From assembly GCA_020891255.1 (NCBI GenBank), contig BQFW01000008.1, forward strand, positions 2,108,001-2,172,000: a stretch of 64,000 nucleotides of DNA, read 5' to 3'. Position numbers and translations under genes: made by a program. Numbering within the stretch: the stretch's first letter is position 1; each line of letters opens with the position of its first letter. Positions 16,779 to 26,035 of this stretch are shown here, piece by piece. Origin of the DNA: Entomortierella parvispora E1425 (lineage: Eukaryota; Fungi; Mortierellomycota). The notes under the pieces were generated by a model. The model was not told the DNA's origin and made no database searches. It saw only the letters and a program-made list of their open reading frames with translations.

Positions 16779-19700
16779 CTAGTCGCACCTCGTATCTGGT
16801 AACATAGGGTATTGCAACCTAGGAATCGACTTGATCGTCTCACCAGAAAGCAGGCATTTAAGTACATGCAGCGTTAAATAGTGCGATGAGAGACGCTTCC
16901 ACAGAACCGAGTACTGGAAAAAGATCGCTGACGTTGGCAAGGGTGAGTTCTAAGGATGCAATATTAGCCGGGCTGAATTTGAAGAACAATAAACAAATGA
17001 ATAAAAAAAAACCGAGGAAACGCTAGCAGTAATCCTTACCGTCAAAAACAAATAGCTGACAGTCCTGGGTATGGTGTCGCGCGGTTCCGCTCCATTCGAA
17101 TCCGGCATCAAACCCTCTAGCCGTTCTTGTATCTCAGCGTTGCGAATATCGATAGGATTCGTTGAAACACGAGATCTAAAATTTCGATTGCCTGGGAAAT
17201 CGTGTTGGAGTGGTGGATGGCCCTGCTGGTGGAGAGCCGGCAGGATGTCTTGCTTGGCCAGCAATGTTTGTTGATGATCCATATTTTGGACCGACGAGTA
17301 ACTGTCTTTCGGTTGATGCTGTTGAGGGTAGTCAGCAGTGACTGACCGCAATGAGCTCACCACCCATCGCAACGGAGTTGCTCGATCAAAAAAGAACCGC
17401 TCGGGACAGACCTCAAGTCGCAGGCCTCCTGGTAACCGGTCAGGGTCCTTCAATCGCAGCATGATTGCAAAAAGAGGGAAATGGTTCAAGCATGCCAGGA
17501 GCGTTTCCATGGTCGCTTGCATACATATGACGGCGACTCGACTCTACAAAGATCCAATAATAACTTCTTAGTGGGAGAAAAGGCAACAGGACAGTGGAAA
17601 ACTACACAACCCATAAAAGGGGCCAAAAAAAAAAAAAGCTTACCAATGCAAATGTGAGATAGTAAACCATTATTGTGGGGAAGAGAAAGGTCAGCAGAGT
17701 GAATAAAATTGTCCCCAGTAGTAGCTGATCCAGGTCATAGTCGCAGGAGTCAATGCGATGGCGTAGGGTGTTCCTTTTTTTGCCTAGAATTCAATAGGGA
17801 GTTGCTTAAGTGCCTGTGTAATTATGTTACTGTGATAAGCGGTGGTTCACATGTTTAAGAAATACCTCGGAAGAGATTAAAGAGTGAGTAGAGGATAGTC
17901 AGCTGCCAGTGGAATATTCTTGCGGCCACCATATAGAACCAATATATATGTAGCGTCGTAAATGCCAATAGGTCGGATATTAAAGACAGGGTCATGGTAG
18001 CTCCAAAAATGCCCGAGAAGCCGATGAAGTTAATGACTATCGGCACAATGGGCTGCAAAGAGAAAATAAAGTCTTGAAAAAGTAGTGGCTACAGTCAGTA
18101 ATCACGAAGCAAAGCCTAGGTGATCAAACGATGATGACTTACCTCTCCAAAGCTCCATAAGCCATTTAAAGAGCTGGCCTAAAAAGGGATTGAGCTCCGG
18201 ATTAAGCTTAAGTCCCGCCGGGTACTCGTTCTTGGAAGTCAGCCACTCCAATACGGCAGAGATTGAATCAATCGTGTAGTCCTGTGGGAGTGAATGTCGA
18301 CCGTAAGAATGTAGCCCAGTGATACGATACGAGCGCAGATATAGTCAAGAAAACACTTGTAAATTGACTACCTTTACATATCGCTGAAGAACATCTGCCA
18401 TGTGGCAATTATTACTGATCAAGAAAGAGCCCAAGGCAACACCAATGATAATGTCGTTTGCCACAAGCCACATGCTATTGTAAAAGCTGATAGGAAAATA
18501 CGCACAGTCAGAGTCTATTGGTATTCAATAATATATTAGTCAGTAACGTATTGTATACCTGATATATTGCGCGCGGGTAATTGAGGTGTTTGTCCACGCC
18601 TTTTTTTTAGCCATATAGTATTGCCAGGGCCAAAAGCATGCCTGCTGCAGCCGAAGATCGATCTGTTGTCCTGTGGTTGTCACATCCTTGATGGCAATAC
18701 CGTTGAACGCCCAGGTCGGGAACTTCCAATTCAATATCCACAAACATATCTCCACCAATGCTCTTAATACAAAAAGTGTGATCATGAGAGGACGGATCGT
18801 AAATGGCTGAATAAGGGGCCACAATGTCGTTATGGTGACTGAAAGTTTAGAGCGAACTTTCAAGCTCAAATCGACAGCGGATTCTCGAACAGCTTCAGAC
18901 ATACTCCTGCTTCTTGCCCGTCGGCGTAACAAGTTTTTTGCTTTTGAGTGCACAGCCTGCTCCATTTCATACGAAGAATTGATCTAGTATTGCACATGTG
19001 AAGTTTGAGTATAAAAGACAACGTGATCATTCTTAAATACAGTCCAGACAAGAAGTTACCTGTTGTAATGTAACGTTCATATCATCAGTCACCGTTCTGC
19101 CAGAAGATGTTATGAACAGTCGCGAATGATTCAATGACGACCTCGTTTTCTTCTGAGCTACCTTTGGACTCAACGCTGCATCAAACAGTGCCCCAGAGGC
19201 ATTGATTTTTGATATATCAAGAATCAATGGGTCCAATGAAAGAAACTGGAAGCTCCTGGGGTCAGGCTGCCTGTAAAATATAATCTCTGAGCTTACATTG
19301 CTATATCTGAATCCACAGCAATGCAACGACTCCAGTGAGGGTATGTAGGTTGGCTTAATATTGATGGTAAGCCACAGATTTGCGGTTTGCTTATGTTCCA
19401 GTAAAGAGCGTGACTCTAACAGGCGTCGATTGCTTTCGGAAACTGAAGCCGCATCCATGCCATCTGCAAAGGGTACAATTGCCACTCCTAGCACCACGGG
19501 GTTGACACCACATGCCTTGTTGATAGCTGAAAAATGGGAGTCTGCTGCCACTAATCCCAGGGCGGATACAAGTGCATCTAGCTATCGTCATTTGGTCGTG
19601 ATGAAGTCGCGTCAAGTTCAATCATTCAAGATGTGCAGTGGTGAATGCAAATGTACTTACATCAATATCGGAGACAATGGTCGCTATGCATGCTGTGAAG

Positions 19701-19798
19701 CTTCTGACATTCCAGCCAATGATAAATCCAGTTCTGAGGTGTCGAGAACACAGGTGCGCTGGCCACAACGTTTTTGATATGGCTGCCGATGAGTTCAT
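16779..19798 (-). CDS. GPI1: GPI-GlcNAc transferase subunit Gpi1/PIG-Q (multi-exon)
   Basis: Exons encode [52 protein letters not shown] and [22 protein letters not shown], with canonical GT-AG junctions. Confidence 0.92.
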
Positions 19799-20604
19799 GA
19801 TCCCACTGGCGGTAAAAGGCCGAATAAGAGTCGTGGACAGAATACAGTTGGTGCTACAAGATCGTTTCAGAAACTTCCACGTCTCTGCAAATGCTCTCTG
19901 GCCGAGGTTCGGAACGGGTAGTCTTGTTTCTAATAGTAAAGTAGGAGTTGTCTAATAAGCATTTGTTCTGTAGAGGCATGTATTAGACGCACGGAATCTC
20001 TTACTCTTCTCGCTTCAAAATTGGCAATGCGCTCAAGAGGGATAAGGATCAGGAGAAAGAGTGTAATCAGAATAAGAAAGGCGTACAGGAGATGTCGCTA
20101 AAAAAATAGACGAATGTGGTTAGTAAGTGACAACTTTTGGATCTGGCAACAGATGAACTAATTCAATGTCACAGACCTTGTGGGTTGTTTCAGGAACGGA
20201 TGCTGCAAAGTCGTAGACGGTCGAAATTACGGCAAAATTGCAGGCGTGGTAGCCAATAGCAAATGAAAGGATGGCCGATATCAGGTAGGTCCGCATTCAG
20301 AGCAACGCCAGAAAGATTGATGTGGAGATGCCTGCATTAATTGTTGCGATCTGTTCACGCAAAACCCTCCAAGCTCACGTATCACGTGATGGTGTTTCAC
20401 ACCGCGTCCCAATTTGCCTGAGGTCGCACCCTGGCTGGCTGCGCTGCAACCCCCAATCCTCAATGCACGCGTACGAAAGCGCGCCCCTCCATTCGTCTTC
20501 ATGCTTTTCTTTTCATCGCGGTTTACTTATGTTGAATCGTAATGTCTATTAGCCTCTGAATGGCGCTAAAGTCCAAGAAAAGAGAAAAGTGACCTGCTTT
20601 CAAG

Positions 20605-23600
20605 ATGTCCGGCGCCGAAGCCCAACATTCTGATCAAACTGCGGTTGCCGTCTCCAGCTCAAAACAATAGGGCGAAGAACAAGGGCCAGCTCGCTGCAGC
20701 AACCGATACACTTTCAGCGACTGCTTAGACAAACTGAGGCACAGCGCTTCAATTGATGAGGCTGCCTGGGCACAGTACCAATCAGGAATATCCCCCGACA
20801 AGGAAGAAAAAGTGTTGTGGTTCCTTACACACCTGCCGTTGTGCAACAACCAAGACGCTGAAAAGGCATTGAGCGAAAAGGAACTCGAACAACGTCGTAT
20901 CAAATCCGCCAACTTCATGACGGAGCAGGTCTTGCTGCTCCAGAGTCCAAGTGTCATTGTTTTCTGCCACCAAGGTAGAATAGGAGGCCAGAGGGTAAGT
21001 TAGCAGTCTTTACAATTACTTGGTTGCTTGACAGGATATGTTTCGTGGGCTGCTTCCTAAAACCCAACCACCTTCCTATTTTCCAATCTAGGACCACTGT
21101 ATCAAGAGGTATGTTACTACAATTAGCTCCAAGAGGGGATACGATGGTGTTAATGATGATGGGCCAATGATGGCTTATGAAATCAAAAGTCGCCAAGAGA
21201 GAGAAGAGCTGGAAGAATGGGGCACGCCTCGTCACACCTGGGTCTCTGCAGGCGACGACTCTGCCTGCGCAATACATTCTCATCTCCCTGAAGAGCCGAT
21301 TGCCTACGGACAGAGGCAGCCCCAAAGCTGTGTCGAATCTTAATTCCCTCCGTTTTCGACGTTTTCGACCAAATGAGATGAATCAAGCCCGTACGCCAGC
21401 GCACATTGACTCTATTTCAGACAAGGCTAAAGGTAAGAATTAAATGGATTGATATATGGTATCATAGATTGTAGACTACTAACTAATCTTCAAACTACAG
21501 TCTTCGATGATGCAGAGACTGACAGTCATGGATGCAGGGTCATTTATGTTCTGAGGACACTGGCTACCGTACTCATCATCAAGAAAACCCTGGTTCACCT
21601 TTCGAAGCTGATGAGCAGACGACCGAATACCAGGTCTTAGTTGCAGATCAGGATAACTTAGGCCAGTTCGTAGAGAGCCTGAATCTTTTATCAAAAAGAT
21701 TCTTTATTCGGACTGCGCAGAGTTGGTTGTGGGGAGCCTTTTGTCTCATGTTCTCCGAGACTCAACAGACCTGCTGGGGCCAAAAGCTCGCAAGTCAAAG
21801 TCGCAAGACGCATTGAAGGAGGCTGTCACTTCGTTTCAAATGTTCAAACGGCTGCATCCAGGATTCAAAGCTGTGTCAACCCAACCAACATACCCCTCGG
21901 TGTTGTCATTGACGATCTGGCGCCCAAGATTTGCCTGCATCTGAAAATGCACTACAGAAAGCTCCCGCAGACCATCCGAGCCAAGGTAACATTCGCATTT
22001 TTGATGACATGGTTGACAACAATAATGCACTCGATTCTAATACCATATCGTGATTCTAGATGGAAAAAAGCTAGGCTTTGATCCTGCCAATGGTTCAACA
22101 GCCGAATATAACATTGAGAACATTGCAGAGAATAGCGGTGATGGTGACGCCACTCTTGATAAAGACACCGACGATGACGATCCTCGAAAGAAACCTAAAA
22201 ACATTGTCCTCGACATATCCTGGCTTGCTGGAATGATCTTCAAAAGCCCGCTACCGCAAAGCAACCTCAGTCCTGCATCCAGCCAAAGATGAGAGACTGC
22301 TTTATCGATATCAGGGAAGAGTGGCTGATGCGCATTTTATGAGGAGAAAATGCGGGAAACGTTAGAAAGATCTGGAGTGGCCGCTCGTGCGACAGCCAGT
22401 GGGCCCAAACTAAGTCAACTCGTCGACGGTTACCCTCATCAAAATGCTCTTCATCGGCGATAAGGAGTATATTCAACTTGCAAACAAGCAGCAAACAATA
22501 TATGGGAATTGTACAACAACCGTGGAAGAACGTTCTAAGAGCACTCTGGCATCTATGGGCAGGGAAGGCTGAGCCGGTACCTGGTCGACCGCATCGACTA
22601 TTACAGAGTCCGACACAATGAAGCTCTCTGGGCCAGGTCGTCATCCTCGTTATCGTCAACATCTGCAGTGCTGTCTCCTTCCAACCCTTCATAACTGCCA
22701 ACACCACCCCAAGGAGCAAGCAAGGTCCTTTCGGTATGCATTGAACAACTTCATCCGTACAGACGACCATCAACTACAGCTTTTAACGTATGACCTTACC
22801 AAGAAACGACAGGCGCCCGGGCGCAAAAACCATCTATGACATATTGGGAGCCGATACACTACCCGTCAATTGATAATCGACATCTTTGGTGAAGACTTGG
22901 AGTCTGTACTGGTAGTCGGCATTTGCCCGGGAGAAGTTGTCAGCGGCGCGTTCTGTTTGCGTCTGAATGAGGACACTGTGGTCAACTTGGTGGTGAAGCG
23001 CACGTCACTGTGCCTGCCCACACTGACTTTCAGAGCACGGCAAGAGGAATGGAAGTGACAATGCCCGCAAGAATGTCCCGCGGACAGTATCAATCGGCCT
23101 TTTTGCCAATCCTGGGACGACCTCGAGTCTGCCCACAAGCGGTACTTCAAGCTGGAGCCAGTAATACACGGATTTTACTCCTCCCCAGATTGGAAACGCG
23201 CAGCTCATCAACATAGGATGGCAGAGTTGTCTGAAATGGATCTGGCGGTCGCAGGGGTGTTGCGCATGGTCGACGGGGCGCTGGAGGGCACCCCAATCGC
23301 AGACCGGAAGGTCTTTTTCGCCCTCGGCGGCAAGTTCAGAACGGGGCTGAACCTCACATCGTTGCGTACTACGTTCCTCCGCCGCTTGGCGCAAAAGGTA
23401 ACAAAAAGGATGAAAGGTTGAAAGGGCGCTTCCAGAGCAATATGGAGATAGCGTGAATACTGACTATTTCATTTTAATGACTATAGAGCACGGCCCTGGG
23501 ATACCATACCGCATTTGTGGACGAGTACCTTACGTCCATAATGTGCCCAAGGTGCGTTGCCAGGGGCGTAAAGACCAGGCTCGCCAAACCTTCGATGCGT

Positions 23601-23749
23601 GTGTGCGCCTGCACCGAGTGCAACGGTGGATCCACCGCGACCTGGTGGGCGCACACAGTACTGCCCTGATTGGCGAGCAGTACGTCAAGACTCTCGGACG
23701 ACCAGAGCCCCTCGCAAGGCCCCTTCCACTCCAAAGCACACCACTATAG
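20605..23749 (+). pseudogene. Fanzor (eukaryotic TnpB/Cas12-like RuvC nuclease), intron-containing, degenerate
   Basis: In order: FIRTDD (TDG-like, 22759), VVGICPGE (RuvC-I, catalytic Asp position is Cys, 22924), VDEYLTSIMCPRC (RuvC-II Glu 23523 plus Zn finger), CACTEC, WIHRDLVGAHS (RuvC-III Asp 23639), RPEPLARP. Introns include 21986-22059 and 23398-23486. Several stops and frameshifts. Confidence 0.8.
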
Positions 23750-25167
23750 ACAGTCACTATAGTACTTTTATCCCATCTGCCTGCTACGGAGTAGGGATAA
23801 TAAAGCACCTAGCTTCCACCCATACCTATTGCAGGTGACCACCCACCGAGAGAGATGCGATATAACGAAAGGCGGTAGTAGTCATTCCCACTTCCCTCTC
23901 CCTCCTGCCTGCGCCATGACCATCTACTGAGCACAGGGCTTGACCTTGCCAAAGACTGGTGCAGCTCGATGAGATCTTTTGCGGCAGTCAAAGTGGCTCT
24001 ATCTTGTGTCTGCTGTTCGGAGCATCTTTTCATCTTTGGAAAAGTTTGTCCAGAGTGGCTTTGGGTGAAGTGACGCATATGTTCTGGTTTCTTTTTTCAT
24101 TACCTTTGCTCTTGCAGTTAGAGATACACATCTCTGTTATATATCTCCGTTACAGCAAAAGACACGTTGACCACCATTGTCTTGGAACAGCCCTCGGCAA
24201 ACCAGCCCCTATAACGTCATAGCCCCTGTCTCATGGCCCTCGCCTTATAACTCCTGTCTAGCTCTTTGTCTCGAGCAATCCCCCGATCATTCTATTCCTG
24301 TACAAAAGGGCTCAGGACCTTCTTCACTCCAACTTCAGCACCATCACAAAACACTCAGAATAAATTCCTGACCACAAAGAAATCCTCGCCCAGGTCCTTA
24401 CCCTCGTCCTGATTTTTGTCCTTGTCCTTGTCCTGGCCCTAGTACTGGCCTTATTCTTGTCCCATTCTTACCCCAGTCCCTTGCCTCTTCCTTTCTAATT
24501 GCGTCGTTGACTTGAAACTTGTTGCCCATAATCTTTACAGTTTGACTGAGAACGATGCGAATCGCCTTGATCTGTAATATCTCGATGAGGACAGGGCTCA
24601 CTAATCCGAGACTTAGTTAGCTGTGAGAGCTCGCTCAGGGTGCTTCCGAGCGGTACCACTGCAAGCCCCACAAAGATCCCGAAAAGGAAGAGAGGGAAAG
24701 CGCGGAACGAAATATCAAACGAAATTTGCCCAAAAATGTACTGTGGGGTATGCAATTACGAAGCATATTTCTATTCTTCTTCATGTGTGCACATAGATGG
24801 TTTTCGTTCCTTACCAGCATACACCCCACTACGACTCAGGGCATCGTCATACGCCCATGTAGAAGCACCGCGGTGCTCTCGTTTTCATGCGGCGGAGCAA
24901 ACTCTTGAGGCATGGAGCCGTTGGACCGCCTTCACGCATAGCTGCCATCGCTGTTGTTTCGATGGAAAAAGCTTCGCGTGTGCTGGTTTGGACTTTGGGG
25001 AGTAACTCGAGGTTGGTGGGGAGCGTCGTGCATGTAGACGATTTTCAGTGCAGGGTAGAGAGAAAAAGACTGTTGCAGGTTTGAGCAGTGCAGAGCGGAG
25101 AGAAAGGGCTAATGCCCATCCTTAATGGCCTCGATGGTGTGGCAGATTGTGTGACTATGGCAGGGTA

Positions 25168-25247
25168 GAGCTGTGTATCTGTGGTGAGAGCTGTGTGTCT
25201 CGATGAAGGTTGCGTGTCTGTGGCGTAGGCGGTGTATCTTTGGTGGT
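25168..25247. repeat. Degenerate tandem repeat, 4 x 20 bp
   Basis: GAGCTGTGTATCTGTGGTGA / GAGCTGTGTGTCTCGATGAA / GGTTGCGTGTCTGTGGCGTA / GGCGGTGTATCTTTGGTGGT. Confidence 0.6.
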
Positions 25248-25268
25248 GGCGATGTGATGCTCGCACGT

Positions 25269-26035
25269 CTATAGTGATGCAACTCGTTTAGAGCACTGCT
25301 GTTGAAAAGCGAAAAGAGGTGGACGTTGTGCCAATATAAATCCTTCTAGAGCATCAGAACCGGCACCTAGGATTAGTAAGGACTTAGCAAAGTCCTTCGG
25401 CTTTAATACCACACTATCCAGTCTCTGCCCCTGTGCTTTGTTAATTGTCATGGCGAAGGCAGGGCGGGCAGGGGGCGGAACTCGACGAAACATGAGAGGA
25501 GACACGCCATCCTCGTCGTGTGTAATGAGTGAGAACCTGCAAAGCCACCTCAGTTGGCCTTCGAAGTTGCCATGCATGGTTCAGCCCCGACTGAATACTG
25601 TCGAAGTTCGCGGATGATTGGTCGCGTGCCATTACACACTCCCTGCGTCGGGCTCATTTTTGAAGTAGGATTACAGAATGACCAATCTTCAGGGCAAACC
25701 TGTATGGAAGTGGCGAGCTAATGTTGAGAGAGTTCAAATATTCCGTAGGAAACTCTGCAACATTGGCACCATCTGCAGAATAGAGTCTATCGCAAAATAA
25801 GACTCTTCTTGAGACGAATACATCATTGCGTTCGCTATATCGTTGACTTCGTTGATGTCTTTGCTGCGAGTTGAGAGAGTGGCATGTTCAGAAAAATATC
25901 CAGGAGTCATTGCTGAAGTCTCGATGTTAGGGTAGATTGTCCGAATAAGCATGTGCCGTCCTTCTCGGTAGTTTGCGGTTGAACAATCTATCTGGTATCC
26001 TGATATAGCATTGGTAAGTGCAACCAAAATCCGAA
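25269..26035 (-). mobile_element. Helitron PIF1-like helicase relic (C-terminal part, frameshifted)
   Basis: IYPNI…YFSEHATLSTRSKDINEVN, LNSLNISSPLPYRFALKIG, QGVCNGTR and FRRVPPPARPAFAMTINKAQGQRLDSV match Helitron Hel motifs (LNSLxxSGLPPH, GLCNGTRL, FAMTINKSQGQ). Confidence 0.88.

What the first reader, a model, noticed from the sequence alone, without database searches (positions are those of the whole stretch)
20605..23749. Hidden intron-containing Fanzor (RNA-guided RuvC nuclease) gene
No ORF in the track reveals it. Joining frames across stops, frameshifts and GT-AG introns gives the TnpB/Fanzor C-terminal architecture in the correct order: TDG-like motif (FIRTDD), RuvC-I (VVGICPGE), a helical linker, RuvC-II plus zinc finger (VDEYLTSIMCPRC…CACTEC) and RuvC-III (HRDLVGAHS). 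Seen directly: 22870-23397 is one frame with a single TGA at 23056, and the 23398-23486 intron has a CTGAC branch site and joins in frame. About 2.2 kb of upstream decayed coding sequence implies a long Fanzor1-type protein. Established: Fanzors are eukaryotic TnpB descendants guided by an omega-RNA. Inference: this is a dead copy (RuvC-I Asp reads Cys, plus a 1-nt deletion near 23622) of a spliced Fanzor family that may have intact members elsewhere in this genome and may be poorly described in this lineage.
Basis: partly seen in the sequence, partly recalled or inferred. Interest (0 to 1): 0.9.

Follow-up and report, generated by a model that had tools for sequence, protein, structure and literature searches.

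The report
Truncated dead Fanzor gene relic
This is a broken, front-truncated leftover of a jumping-gene nuclease (a Fanzor, the eukaryotic cousin of CRISPR-Cas12) in a Mortierella-type soil fungus; the copy itself is dead and ordinary, but it belongs to a family whose intact members carry an extra flap-nuclease domain that I found in no paper.

Summary
The piece 23059-23397 finds 24 proteins in an exhaustive search (best E 8e-42, 78% identity), all from Mortierellaceae. Intact relatives keep D-E-D and pass Pfam's Cas12f1-like TNB threshold. Their profile hits only TnpB, Cas12f and Fanzor chains at the top of the PDB. An AlphaFold model of a relative matches solved Fanzor1 structures best (SpuFz, E 7e-9).

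So it is a Fanzor pseudogene, but family homology starts at 21663, not 20605. The upstream kilobase scores no better than shuffled DNA.

Full-length relatives are about 1310-1360 aa, with an N-terminal FEN1/XPG-like nuclease followed by a Fanzor1 module, inside a roughly 5.3-kb unit with terminal inverted repeats. The window copy lacks the first ~680 residues and the left end. It keeps the right end (23799) and two introns at conserved positions. It carries 7 frameshifts, 3 TGA stops and a 27-residue deletion.

Codon-position divergence shows it died late. The scan has already reported intact FEN-Fanzor copies elsewhere in this genome. This window adds only a decayed, 5'-truncated member.

The parts
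21663..23749 (+). Body of the pseudogene. It is the remnant of the C-terminal Fanzor1-like module (WED/REC/RuvC/TNB) and corresponds to residues about 683-1313 of the intact relative P0034.
   Evidence: Frameshift-aware alignments to P0034, P0001, P0036 and P0030. Family C-terminal HMM tiling. DNA identity of 67-70% to L001 12403-14546.
21986..22059 (+). Intron 1 of the relic (74 nt, GT...AG, phase 0, after ...TIRAK).
   Evidence: It sits at the same position as intron 4 of the P0034 gene model in L001.
23398..23486 (+). Intron 2 of the relic (89 nt, GT...AG, CTGAC branch site at 23460-23464, phase 0, after ...RRLAQK).
   Evidence: It sits at the same position as intron 6 of P0034. Relatives read QK|S.ALGY across the join.
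22750..22767 (+). FIRTDD, where the family reads FIRTDG. It forms a beta-hairpin just before RuvC-I.
   Evidence: The AF2 model of the relative has strands at the equivalent residues.
22912..22935 (+). RuvC-I motif VVGICPGE. The catalytic Asp is replaced by Cys (TGC at 22924-22926).
   Evidence: All 13 relatives read G(I/V/W/L)DPG at this column.
23517..23621 (+). The catalytic Glu (VDEY, GAG at 23523-23525) followed by the TNB zinc ribbon (CPRC ... CACTEC).
   Evidence: The window piece hits PF07282 at E 7e-4. The Glu aligns with the NEY Glu of mimivirus L79 in 9b0l. By my count that is residue 467, the residue mutated in the catalytically dead E467A mutant (PMC10530073).
23633..23659 (+). 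RuvC-III motif HRDLVGAHS (Asp codon at 23639-23641). It can be reached only after a frameshift at 23622/23623.
   Evidence: Related copies in other strains carry an extra G after 23623.
22340..22342 (+). In-frame stop TGA, where the relative has Trp.
22837..22839 (+). In-frame stop TGA.
23056..23058 (+). In-frame stop TGA, where the relative has Arg.
21873..22692 (+). Six frameshifts, near 21873, 22066 (an A-run just after intron 1), 22206, 22421, 22540 and 22692.
   Evidence: Related copies in other strains carry an extra C after 22537.
23095..23107 (+). Site of a deletion of about 27 residues relative to P0001 and P0034, in the RuvC insertion/linker region.
23750..23799 (+). Conserved 3' tail and right terminus of the element. 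It has a CTATAG...CTATAG hairpin (23744-23762, overlapping the stop codon) and a TATCCC (23769-23774) ... GGGATA (23794-23799) pairing. The element ends at 23799. This is the expected position of the 3' part of an omega-RNA.
   Evidence: Alignment with five loci from relatives that all end ...AAGGGATA. The consensus fold has one compensatory change in each hairpin. The terminus occurs once in the window.
20605..21662 (+). NOT part of the element.
   Evidence: No similarity to the family above the shuffled level. No Pfam or Atlas family. Part of it (21144-21640) is repeated elsewhere in the genome.

Best explanation
Window 21663-23799 (+) is a 5'-truncated, multiply disabled relic of a transposon-borne gene family specific to Mortierellaceae fungi.

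Intact members are about 1310-1360 aa. They join an N-terminal FEN1/XPG-type 5' nuclease, through a basic linker, to a complete Fanzor1-type (TnpB-like) RuvC/TNB nuclease. They sit in a unit of about 5.3 kb bounded by roughly 37-bp imperfect terminal inverted repeats (TATCCC...GGGATA).

The window copy keeps only the Fanzor module, two introns at conserved positions, the short conserved 3' tail and the right terminus. It has lost the FEN module, the left end and its reading frame: 7 frameshifts, 3 TGA stops, a 27-residue deletion and a catalytic Asp changed to Cys. It cannot make a nuclease.

Shown: the homology, the lesions, the truncation, the retained right end, the conserved D-E-D and the Fanzor1-like fold in relatives.

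Inferred: intact family members act as omega-RNA-guided DNA nucleases that serve the element's maintenance or spread. The RNA would be encoded across the ORF's 3' end and the right terminus. This copy was inactivated fairly recently, after a long history under selection.
For: - Exhaustive phmmer with 23059-23397 returned 24 hits. The best was E 8e-42 at 78% identity, to a 1166-aa protein.
- Every hit whose source I looked up is from Mortierellaceae.
- A family HMM of the C-terminal module is tiled collinearly across 21657-23746.
- PF07282 passes its gathering threshold in relatives, and the window piece scores E 7e-4.
- The top 19 PDB matches of the family profile are all TnpB, Cas12f or Fanzor chains, with the Glu and the RuvC-III Asp aligned.
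- The AF2 model of P0034:680-1313 has pLDDT of roughly 77-91 over most of the RuvC part. Foldseek then ranks SpuFz (7e-9), PpFz and GtFz first, followed by Cas12j, Cas12f and TnpB, and all 50 listed hits are in this superfamily.
- D-E-D is conserved in 13/13, 12/12 and 9/9 members covering each column.
- Lesion map.
- The source-sample contigs reproduce the lesions exactly. Copies 90-95% identical in other strains lack three of them.
- The N-terminal HMM and tblastn find nothing upstream.
- Unit boundaries and TIRs come from two 97%-identical copies.
- The right terminus is conserved in six loci, including the window.
- Codon-position identities are 0.745/0.821/0.474, against 0.639/0.733/0.348 between two intact copies.
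Against: - No RNA data exist for this locus: no RNA run was listed. Splicing and any omega-RNA are therefore inferred only.
- RNA-guided activity has not been shown for any member of this family.
- The global TM-scores of the fold match are low (0.33-0.36), because the model has long disordered stretches and its domain packing is uncertain.
- The cause of the 5' truncation is unknown.
Confidence: 0.9

Rival explanations
1. One reading: a full-length but decayed Fanzor1 gene that starts at the ATG at 20605, with about 2.2 kb of degraded N-terminal coding sequence belonging to the same gene.
For: 20602-21000 is a frame of about 130 codons with only one stop, and it ends at a GTAAGT. Intron-like GT...AG intervals with CTAAC motifs occur in 21000-21500. 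The family's linker region is poorly conserved, so heavy decay there would be hard to see.
Against: - No similarity to any of 14 family N-terminal halves above the shuffled background: 23 bits against 19-26.
- The N-terminal HMM, which includes well-conserved blocks, is silent across the whole window.
- DNA homology to L001 stops at 21694.
- Relatives need about 2.4 kb of gene upstream of residue 683, but only 1.06 kb is on offer.
- There is no Pfam or Atlas family for the frame.
- Part of the stretch is a different repeat.
Confidence: 0.05
2. The copy descends from a FEN-less, Fanzor-only version of the family. Its 5' boundary near 21663 would then be close to a natural gene start rather than a truncation.
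For: Homology begins within a few tens of residues of where the Fanzor module starts in the fusion proteins. Several database models (P0008, P0022, P0042) also begin near this point.
Against: - Those short models come from short contigs, are partial, or may themselves be truncated.
- No start codon or left terminal repeat precedes 21663.
- Every long model has either the FEN module or another N-terminal extension.
Confidence: 0.07
3. The protein is dead, but the relic still does something as RNA. Its intact 3' tail and right terminus would be transcribed into an omega-RNA-like guide that intact paralogous FEN-Fanzor proteins use in trans.
For: The post-stop tail and terminus are conserved and can form the same two hairpins as in intact copies. 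The right end is intact at 23799.
Against: - No RNA evidence at all.
- The covariation support is one compensatory change per hairpin among six sequences, and the overall covariation term is about 0.
- The window tail is about 22 nt shorter than in L001.
- No omega-RNA has been defined for this family.
Confidence: 0.08
4. The motifs are chance matches, or the region is a fragment of an unrelated zinc-finger gene.
For: On the isolated pieces, Pfam and NCBIfam give nothing or only sub-threshold hits.
Against: E values of 1e-42 to 1e-131 to a coherent protein family over 2 kb, in collinear order and with shared intron positions.
Confidence: 0.01

Closest known systems
Fanzor1 nucleases with solved structures: Spizellomyces punctatus SpuFz1 (8GKH, 9CEU-9CEZ), Parasitella parasitica PpFz1 (9CF0/1) and Guillardia theta GtFz1 (9CER).
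   Same: - They are the best structural matches to the intact relative's C-terminal 634 residues, aligned over nearly the full length (E 7e-9 to 4e-5).
- The catalytic layout is the same: Asp on a beta-strand, Glu on the loop just before the TNB zinc ribbon, and Asp on the following helix (PMC11423790).
- They are eukaryotic, intron-bearing and transposon-associated (PMC10530073).
   Different: - Sequence identity is only 11-13%.
- By sequence profile only the RuvC-II/TNB/RuvC-III stretch is detectable (E about 1e-3).
- The Mortierellaceae proteins are twice as long because of an N-terminal FEN1/XPG-like module.
- The window copy is dead and lacks the RuvC-I Asp.
Prokaryotic TnpB (ISDra2, 8EXA/8BF8/8H1J) and Cas12f.
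   Same: They share the RuvC plus TNB core. PF07282 passes in relatives.
   Different: Those proteins have no introns, no TIR-type eukaryotic transposon context and a much shorter REC/WED part. TnpB sits in IS200/605 or IS607 elements that lack TIRs.
Mimivirus L79 / ApmFNuc (Fanzor2, 9B0L).
   Same: It is the second-best sequence-profile hit (E 3e-4). The family's VDEY Glu aligns with the Glu of its NEY motif, which by my count is residue 467. An E467A mutant is catalytically dead (PMC10530073).
   Different: It is a viral, intron-less Fanzor2 lineage of 520 aa, and it is a weaker fold match than the Fanzor1 structures.
FEN1/XPG-Fanzor fusion genes noted by this scan elsewhere in the same genome (for example s1-185060 and s1-173304), and their database homologues P0034, P0035, P0036 and P0040.
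   Same: The window copy belongs to the same protein family (66% amino-acid identity to P0034 over 588 aligned codons). It has the same two introns, the same 3' tail and the same right terminus.
   Different: The window copy lacks the FEN/XPG module, the left end and an open frame. It represents a diverged sublineage, only 67-70% identical in DNA to L001/L002.

Membership tests
Fanzor (eukaryotic TnpB-like RuvC nuclease, Fanzor1 type) | Split RuvC domain with a conserved catalytic Asp (RuvC-I), Glu (before the TNB) and Asp (RuvC-III), tested at the family level. | tested here: met
   Asp is present in 13/13 members, Glu in 12/12 and Asp in 9/9 of those that cover each column. The Glu and the RuvC-III Asp align to those of Cas12f and of mimivirus L79.
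Fanzor (eukaryotic TnpB-like RuvC nuclease, Fanzor1 type) | An intact catalytic triad and an open reading frame in the window copy itself. | tested here: not met
   The RuvC-I Asp is Cys (TGC at 22924-22926). There are 7 frameshifts, 3 in-frame TGA stops and a 27-residue deletion. The lesions are reproduced in the source-sample contigs. The copy is therefore a pseudogene member by descent, not a functional member.
Fanzor (eukaryotic TnpB-like RuvC nuclease, Fanzor1 type) | A TNB zinc ribbon (CxxC...CxxC, Pfam PF07282) inserted between the Glu and RuvC-III. | tested here: met
   Relatives score 36-42 bits against a gathering cutoff of 26.3. The window piece 23487-23624 scores 20.1 bits, E 7e-4, which is below the cutoff but the only hit. 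CPRC and CACTEC are both present.
Fanzor (eukaryotic TnpB-like RuvC nuclease, Fanzor1 type) | An overall WED/REC/RuvC/TNB fold like the solved Fanzor1 structures. | tested here: met
   The AF2 model of relative P0034:680-1313 gives SpuFz, PpFz and GtFz as top Foldseek PDB hits, with probability 1.00 and about 700 aligned columns. Caveats: mean pLDDT is 67 and TM-scores are 0.33-0.36. The test was on a relative, not on the broken window copy.
Fanzor (eukaryotic TnpB-like RuvC nuclease, Fanzor1 type) | A nuclear eukaryotic gene with spliceosomal introns. | tested here: met
   Two GT...AG introns lie at the same phase-0 positions as in the P0034 gene model. Splicing itself is not confirmed by RNA, because no RNA run was listed.
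Fanzor (eukaryotic TnpB-like RuvC nuclease, Fanzor1 type) | An omega-RNA encoded at the element's 3' end, and RNA-guided DNA cleavage. | not testable with these tools
   Only indirect evidence exists: a 3' tail and terminus conserved in six loci, and two small hairpins with one compensatory change each. Rfam is silent. There are no small-RNA data.
Fanzor (eukaryotic TnpB-like RuvC nuclease, Fanzor1 type) | Residence inside a eukaryotic transposon. | tested here: met
   Two 97.4%-identical 5.3-kb copies with different flanks carry imperfect TIRs of about 37 bp. The window retains only the right terminus at 23799 and has no left terminus. The transposase responsible was not identified here.
FEN1/XPG-Fanzor fusion family of Mortierellaceae | An N-terminal XPG-N/XPG-I/H3TH-like 5' nuclease module in the same protein. 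| tested here: not met
   The module is present in relatives. Five models start with MGIxGL, and the N-terminal profile hits XPG (E 3e-5), Rad2, Exo1 and FEN1 in the PDB. It is absent from the window: the N-terminal HMM's best E is 1.9, and tblastn reaches only the shuffled level. The window copy is a truncated descendant of this family, not a fusion gene.

The most novel reading that the evidence does not exclude
Although the protein is dead, the relic keeps the conserved ORF 3' end, tail and right terminus (about 23600-23799). It might still be transcribed into an omega-RNA whose guide is the flanking sequence from 23800 onward. Intact FEN-Fanzor paralogues in the same nucleus could then use that RNA in trans, making this a 'guide-only' relic that still directs cleavage.
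Probability: 0.07. Interest if true: 0.55.

Novelty: new member of a known kind. Interest (0 to 1): 0.3.

Why it matters
By itself this copy matters little. Fanzors with introns are already known to be widespread in fungi (PMC10530073), and a decayed transposon gene is ordinary.

Its value is as supporting material for the family it belongs to.
- It shows that the Mortierellaceae FEN1/XPG-Fanzor elements have diverged sublineages that were under purifying selection until recently.
- It helps define the conserved right terminus and the 3' tail, where a guide RNA would be encoded.
- It shows how copies die: 5' truncation plus point lesions.

The family-level architecture, a flap/5' nuclease fused to an RNA-guided RuvC nuclease, is absent from the papers I could search. 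It resembles engineered exonuclease-Cas fusions. However, it is not encoded in this window, and the scan has already reported it on intact copies.

Tried and rejected
- Pfam and NCBIfam on the separate pieces gave only one sub-threshold PF07282 hit.
- A search for paralogues inside the window found none.
- Rfam on 19000-26000 gave only a chance-level snoRNA hit inside the coding region.
- The N-terminal family HMM against six-frame fragments of the whole window found nothing.
- Sensitive tblastn of 14 N-terminal halves against 20300-21662, with shuffles, reached only background level.
- Pfam and Atlas on the upstream frames found no family. A Pfam call with a wrong frame failed, and one call exceeded the size limit.
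- A search for a left terminal repeat in the window found none.
- An RNA-run search listed none, so splicing and expression could not be tested.
- I tried to identify the genome through an exact host-gene product. It was not on record.
- The supplement of PMC10530073 is not held.
- Literature searches for Fanzor with Mortierella, Mucoromycota or XPG returned no papers. The 'flap endonuclease' hits are unrelated reviews and tools, judged from their titles and abstracts.
- I folded an intact relative instead.
- I considered TGA read-through or recoding, since all three stops are TGA. I rejected it because seven frameshifts and the catalytic substitution remain.
Full report
**1. The observation**

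- FIRTDD lies at 22750-22767 and VVGICPGE at 22912-22935.
- There is one frame from 22870 to 23397 with a single TGA at 23056.
- A GT...AG interval at 23398-23486 has CTGAC at 23460.
- VDEYLTSIMCPRC...CACTEC lies at 23517-23621.
- HRDLVGAHS lies at 23633-23659, in the neighbouring frame.

No listed ORF reveals the gene.

**2. Is it more than chance?**

On the isolated pieces, Pfam gave a single sub-threshold hit: PF07282, the Cas12f1-like TNB domain, E 7e-4 on 23487-23624. NCBIfam gave nothing useful.

The exhaustive HMMER search with the longest unbroken piece (23059-23397, 113 aa) returned 24 proteins. Fourteen were below E 1e-10. The best was E 8e-42 at 78% identity, matching residues 1020-1119 of a 1166-aa protein.

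Every hit whose source I looked up comes from Mortierellaceae: Entomortierella parvispora, Linnemannia elongata, L. gamsii, L. hyalina and L. zychae, several Mortierella species, Podila humilis and Dissophora ornata.

An HMM of the family's C-terminal 630 residues is tiled collinearly by 11 plus-strand fragments between 21657 and 23746. Ten of them have E values from 1e-9 to 6e-42.

**3. Is the family a Fanzor?**

- Intact relatives pass Pfam's gathering threshold for PF07282, at 36-42 bits against 26.3.
- A profile of 13 C-terminal modules (A1) was searched against all PDB sequences. TnpB, Cas12f and Fanzor chains took all of the first 19 places: CnCas12f1, mimivirus L79, AsCas12f, SpuFz1, GtFz1, ISDra2 TnpB and others. 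The family's VDEY and HRD..GAHNIA aligned to their Glu and RuvC-III Asp.
- By my count the aligned Glu in L79 is residue 467. That is the residue whose E467A mutant is catalytically dead (PMC10530073).
- An AlphaFold2 model of P0034:680-1313 has mean pLDDT 67, and roughly 77-91 over most of the RuvC/TNB part.
- Foldseek against the PDB ranked SpuFz first (E 7e-9, about 700 aligned columns). PpFz and GtFz follow, then Cas12j, Cas12f and TnpB. All 50 listed hits belong to this superfamily.
- The placement of the three acidic residues matches the canonical Fanzor/TnpB layout described in PMC11423790: on a strand, on the loop before the TNB, and on the following helix.
- D-E-D is conserved in 13/13, 12/12 and 9/9 family members that cover the respective columns.

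**4. What the window copy really is**

Full-length relatives are about 1310-1360 aa, and five models start with MGIxGL. Their N-terminal ~430 residues carry the motif series of FEN1/XPG nucleases (A2). As a profile, that region hits XPG (E 3e-5), Rad2, Exo1 and FEN1 in the PDB.

None of this module is in the window.
- The N-terminal HMM's best E over all six frames of 64 kb is 1.9.
- Sensitive tblastn of 14 N-terminal halves against 20300-21662 peaks at 23 bits, while shuffled versions reach 19-26 bits.
- Protein homology starts at 21663, which equals P0034 residue 683.
- DNA homology to the E. parvispora locus L001 starts at 21694.

So the copy is 5'-truncated.

The frame at 20602-21000 has no Pfam or Atlas family and remains unexplained. 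The source-sample contigs suggest that 21144-21640 is a different repeat.

**5. Lesions**

The lesions come from frameshift-aware alignments.
- Frameshifts near 21873, 22066, 22206, 22421, 22540, 22692 and 23622.
- In-frame TGA stops at 22340, 22837 and 23056.
- A deletion of about 27 residues at about 23095.
- RuvC-I Asp changed to Cys (22924-22926).

The two introns (21986-22059 and 23398-23486) are phase 0. They sit exactly where the P0034 gene model has its introns 4 and 6.

Logan contigs of the source sample reproduce the window with no differences over 21188-23533 and 23594-23692. Contigs from other samples with the same species label are 90-95% identical. They carry an extra C after 22537, an extra G after 23623 and an extra codon after 23327/8. 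Close relatives therefore lack these lesions.

Identity to L001 by codon position is 0.745/0.821/0.474. The shape is similar to that between two intact copies, 0.639/0.733/0.348. Most of the divergence therefore accumulated under purifying selection, and inactivation came late.

**6. The element**

Two E. parvispora copies, L001 and L002, share a 5.3-kb unit at 97.4% identity with unrelated flanks. The unit begins about 660 bp before the start codon and ends about 74 bp after the stop. Its ends form an imperfect inverted repeat of about 37 bp, TATCCCATTCTCCGTATACCGGGCAAATTTGCC / GGCTAAATTTGCCTGTGGTACAGACTAAGGGATA.

Loci from four further copies or species end in the same ...AAGGGATA (L003 reads AAGAGATA). 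They share a post-stop block, CTATAGA..ACTATAGTT..TTTATCC.

The window keeps this tail and the terminus (...TGCCTGCTACGGAGTAGGGATA, ending at 23799). It has no left terminus anywhere.

RNAalifold predicts two short hairpins in the tail, CTATAG/CTATAG and TATCCC/GGGATA. Each has one compensatory change, both in L003, but the overall covariation term is about zero. This is compatible with an omega-RNA 3' part or with transposase-binding repeats, and it is not decisive.

**7. Context**

The neighbours look like host genes: a Gpi1 C-terminal exon, an esterase, a zinc-ribbon protein and an HSF-type factor. The relic therefore lies among genes rather than in the LTR nest at the start of the window.

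**8. Earlier notes of the scan**

I had already derived the FEN-Fanzor architecture from database relatives when I found that the scan has reported FEN1/XPG-Fanzor fusion genes at several other places in this same genome. These include an intact 1363-residue gene. That length equals P0035 of E. parvispora, which suggests that L001-L003 are from the window's own genome.

They are AI notes. I verified the architecture independently only on the public homologues.

**9. Literature**

Fanzors are known to be widespread in fungi, to carry introns and nuclear localisation signals, and to ride in diverse transposons (PMC10530073). Structures of fungal Fanzor1s exist (PMC11423790).

No paper in the searchable library combines Fanzor with Mortierella, Mucoromycota or XPG. 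The 'flap endonuclease' hits are unrelated, judged from their titles and abstracts.

**10. Verdict**

The region is a genuine but dead and 5'-truncated Fanzor relic. As such it is a new member of a known kind and of modest interest. The unusual feature of its family, the FEN1/XPG fusion, is not present in this window.

Noticed in passing
P0034, P0035, P0036, P0040 and P0001 (relatives); loci L001-L004: Intact relatives carry an N-terminal FEN1/XPG-like nuclease module (MGIxGL..., DG..S..K...KRD, QSD.CIA, ITKDSDLMAF, NDY..GV..YGL) in the same protein as the Fanzor module. As a profile it hits XPG, Rad2, Exo1 and FEN1 in the PDB. I found no paper describing it.
   Followed up: partly
window 23894-23938 and 25429-25473: A 45-nt inverted repeat (78% complementary) bounds a unit of about 1.58 kb that starts 95 nt after the Fanzor right end. 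It may be a small non-autonomous TIR element.
   Followed up: no
window 20602-21000 (+): A frame of about 130 codons with a single stop (TAG at 20668) ends at a GTAAGT. It has no family, Pfam or Atlas match, so whether it is an exon of something is unknown.
   Followed up: partly
window 21144-21640: In the source sample's contigs this stretch has extra depth and several short, diverged contigs with loose ends. The DNA just upstream of the truncation point therefore seems to be a different repeat, which may have caused the truncation.
   Followed up: no
P0032 and P0033 (Linnemannia hyalina), locus L005 3001-9511: These gene models place a piggyBac-type DDE transposase domain (PF13843) upstream of the Fanzor module in one 1418-1479-aa product. 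This could be a real fusion, a nested insertion or a merged gene model.
   Followed up: no
L001 9344-9380 and 14600-14638; right ends of L003-L006; window 23794-23799: Every element end reads TA next to TCCC.../...GGGA (TATCCC...GGGATA). That is compatible with a TA target-site duplication of a Tc1/mariner-type vehicle, but it cannot be told apart from a TIR that itself ends in TA.
   Followed up: partly
window 22340, 22837, 23056: All three in-frame stops of the relic are TGA. With three events this is not significant.
   Followed up: no
L001 13215-13332 (P0034 gene model): The public gene model of P0034 skips 39 residues (YGKRTTT...RINFYR) as an 'intron'. The near-identical copy P0001 translates through them, and P0001's own C-terminus is mis-modelled. 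Public models of this family are unreliable at these points.
   Followed up: partly
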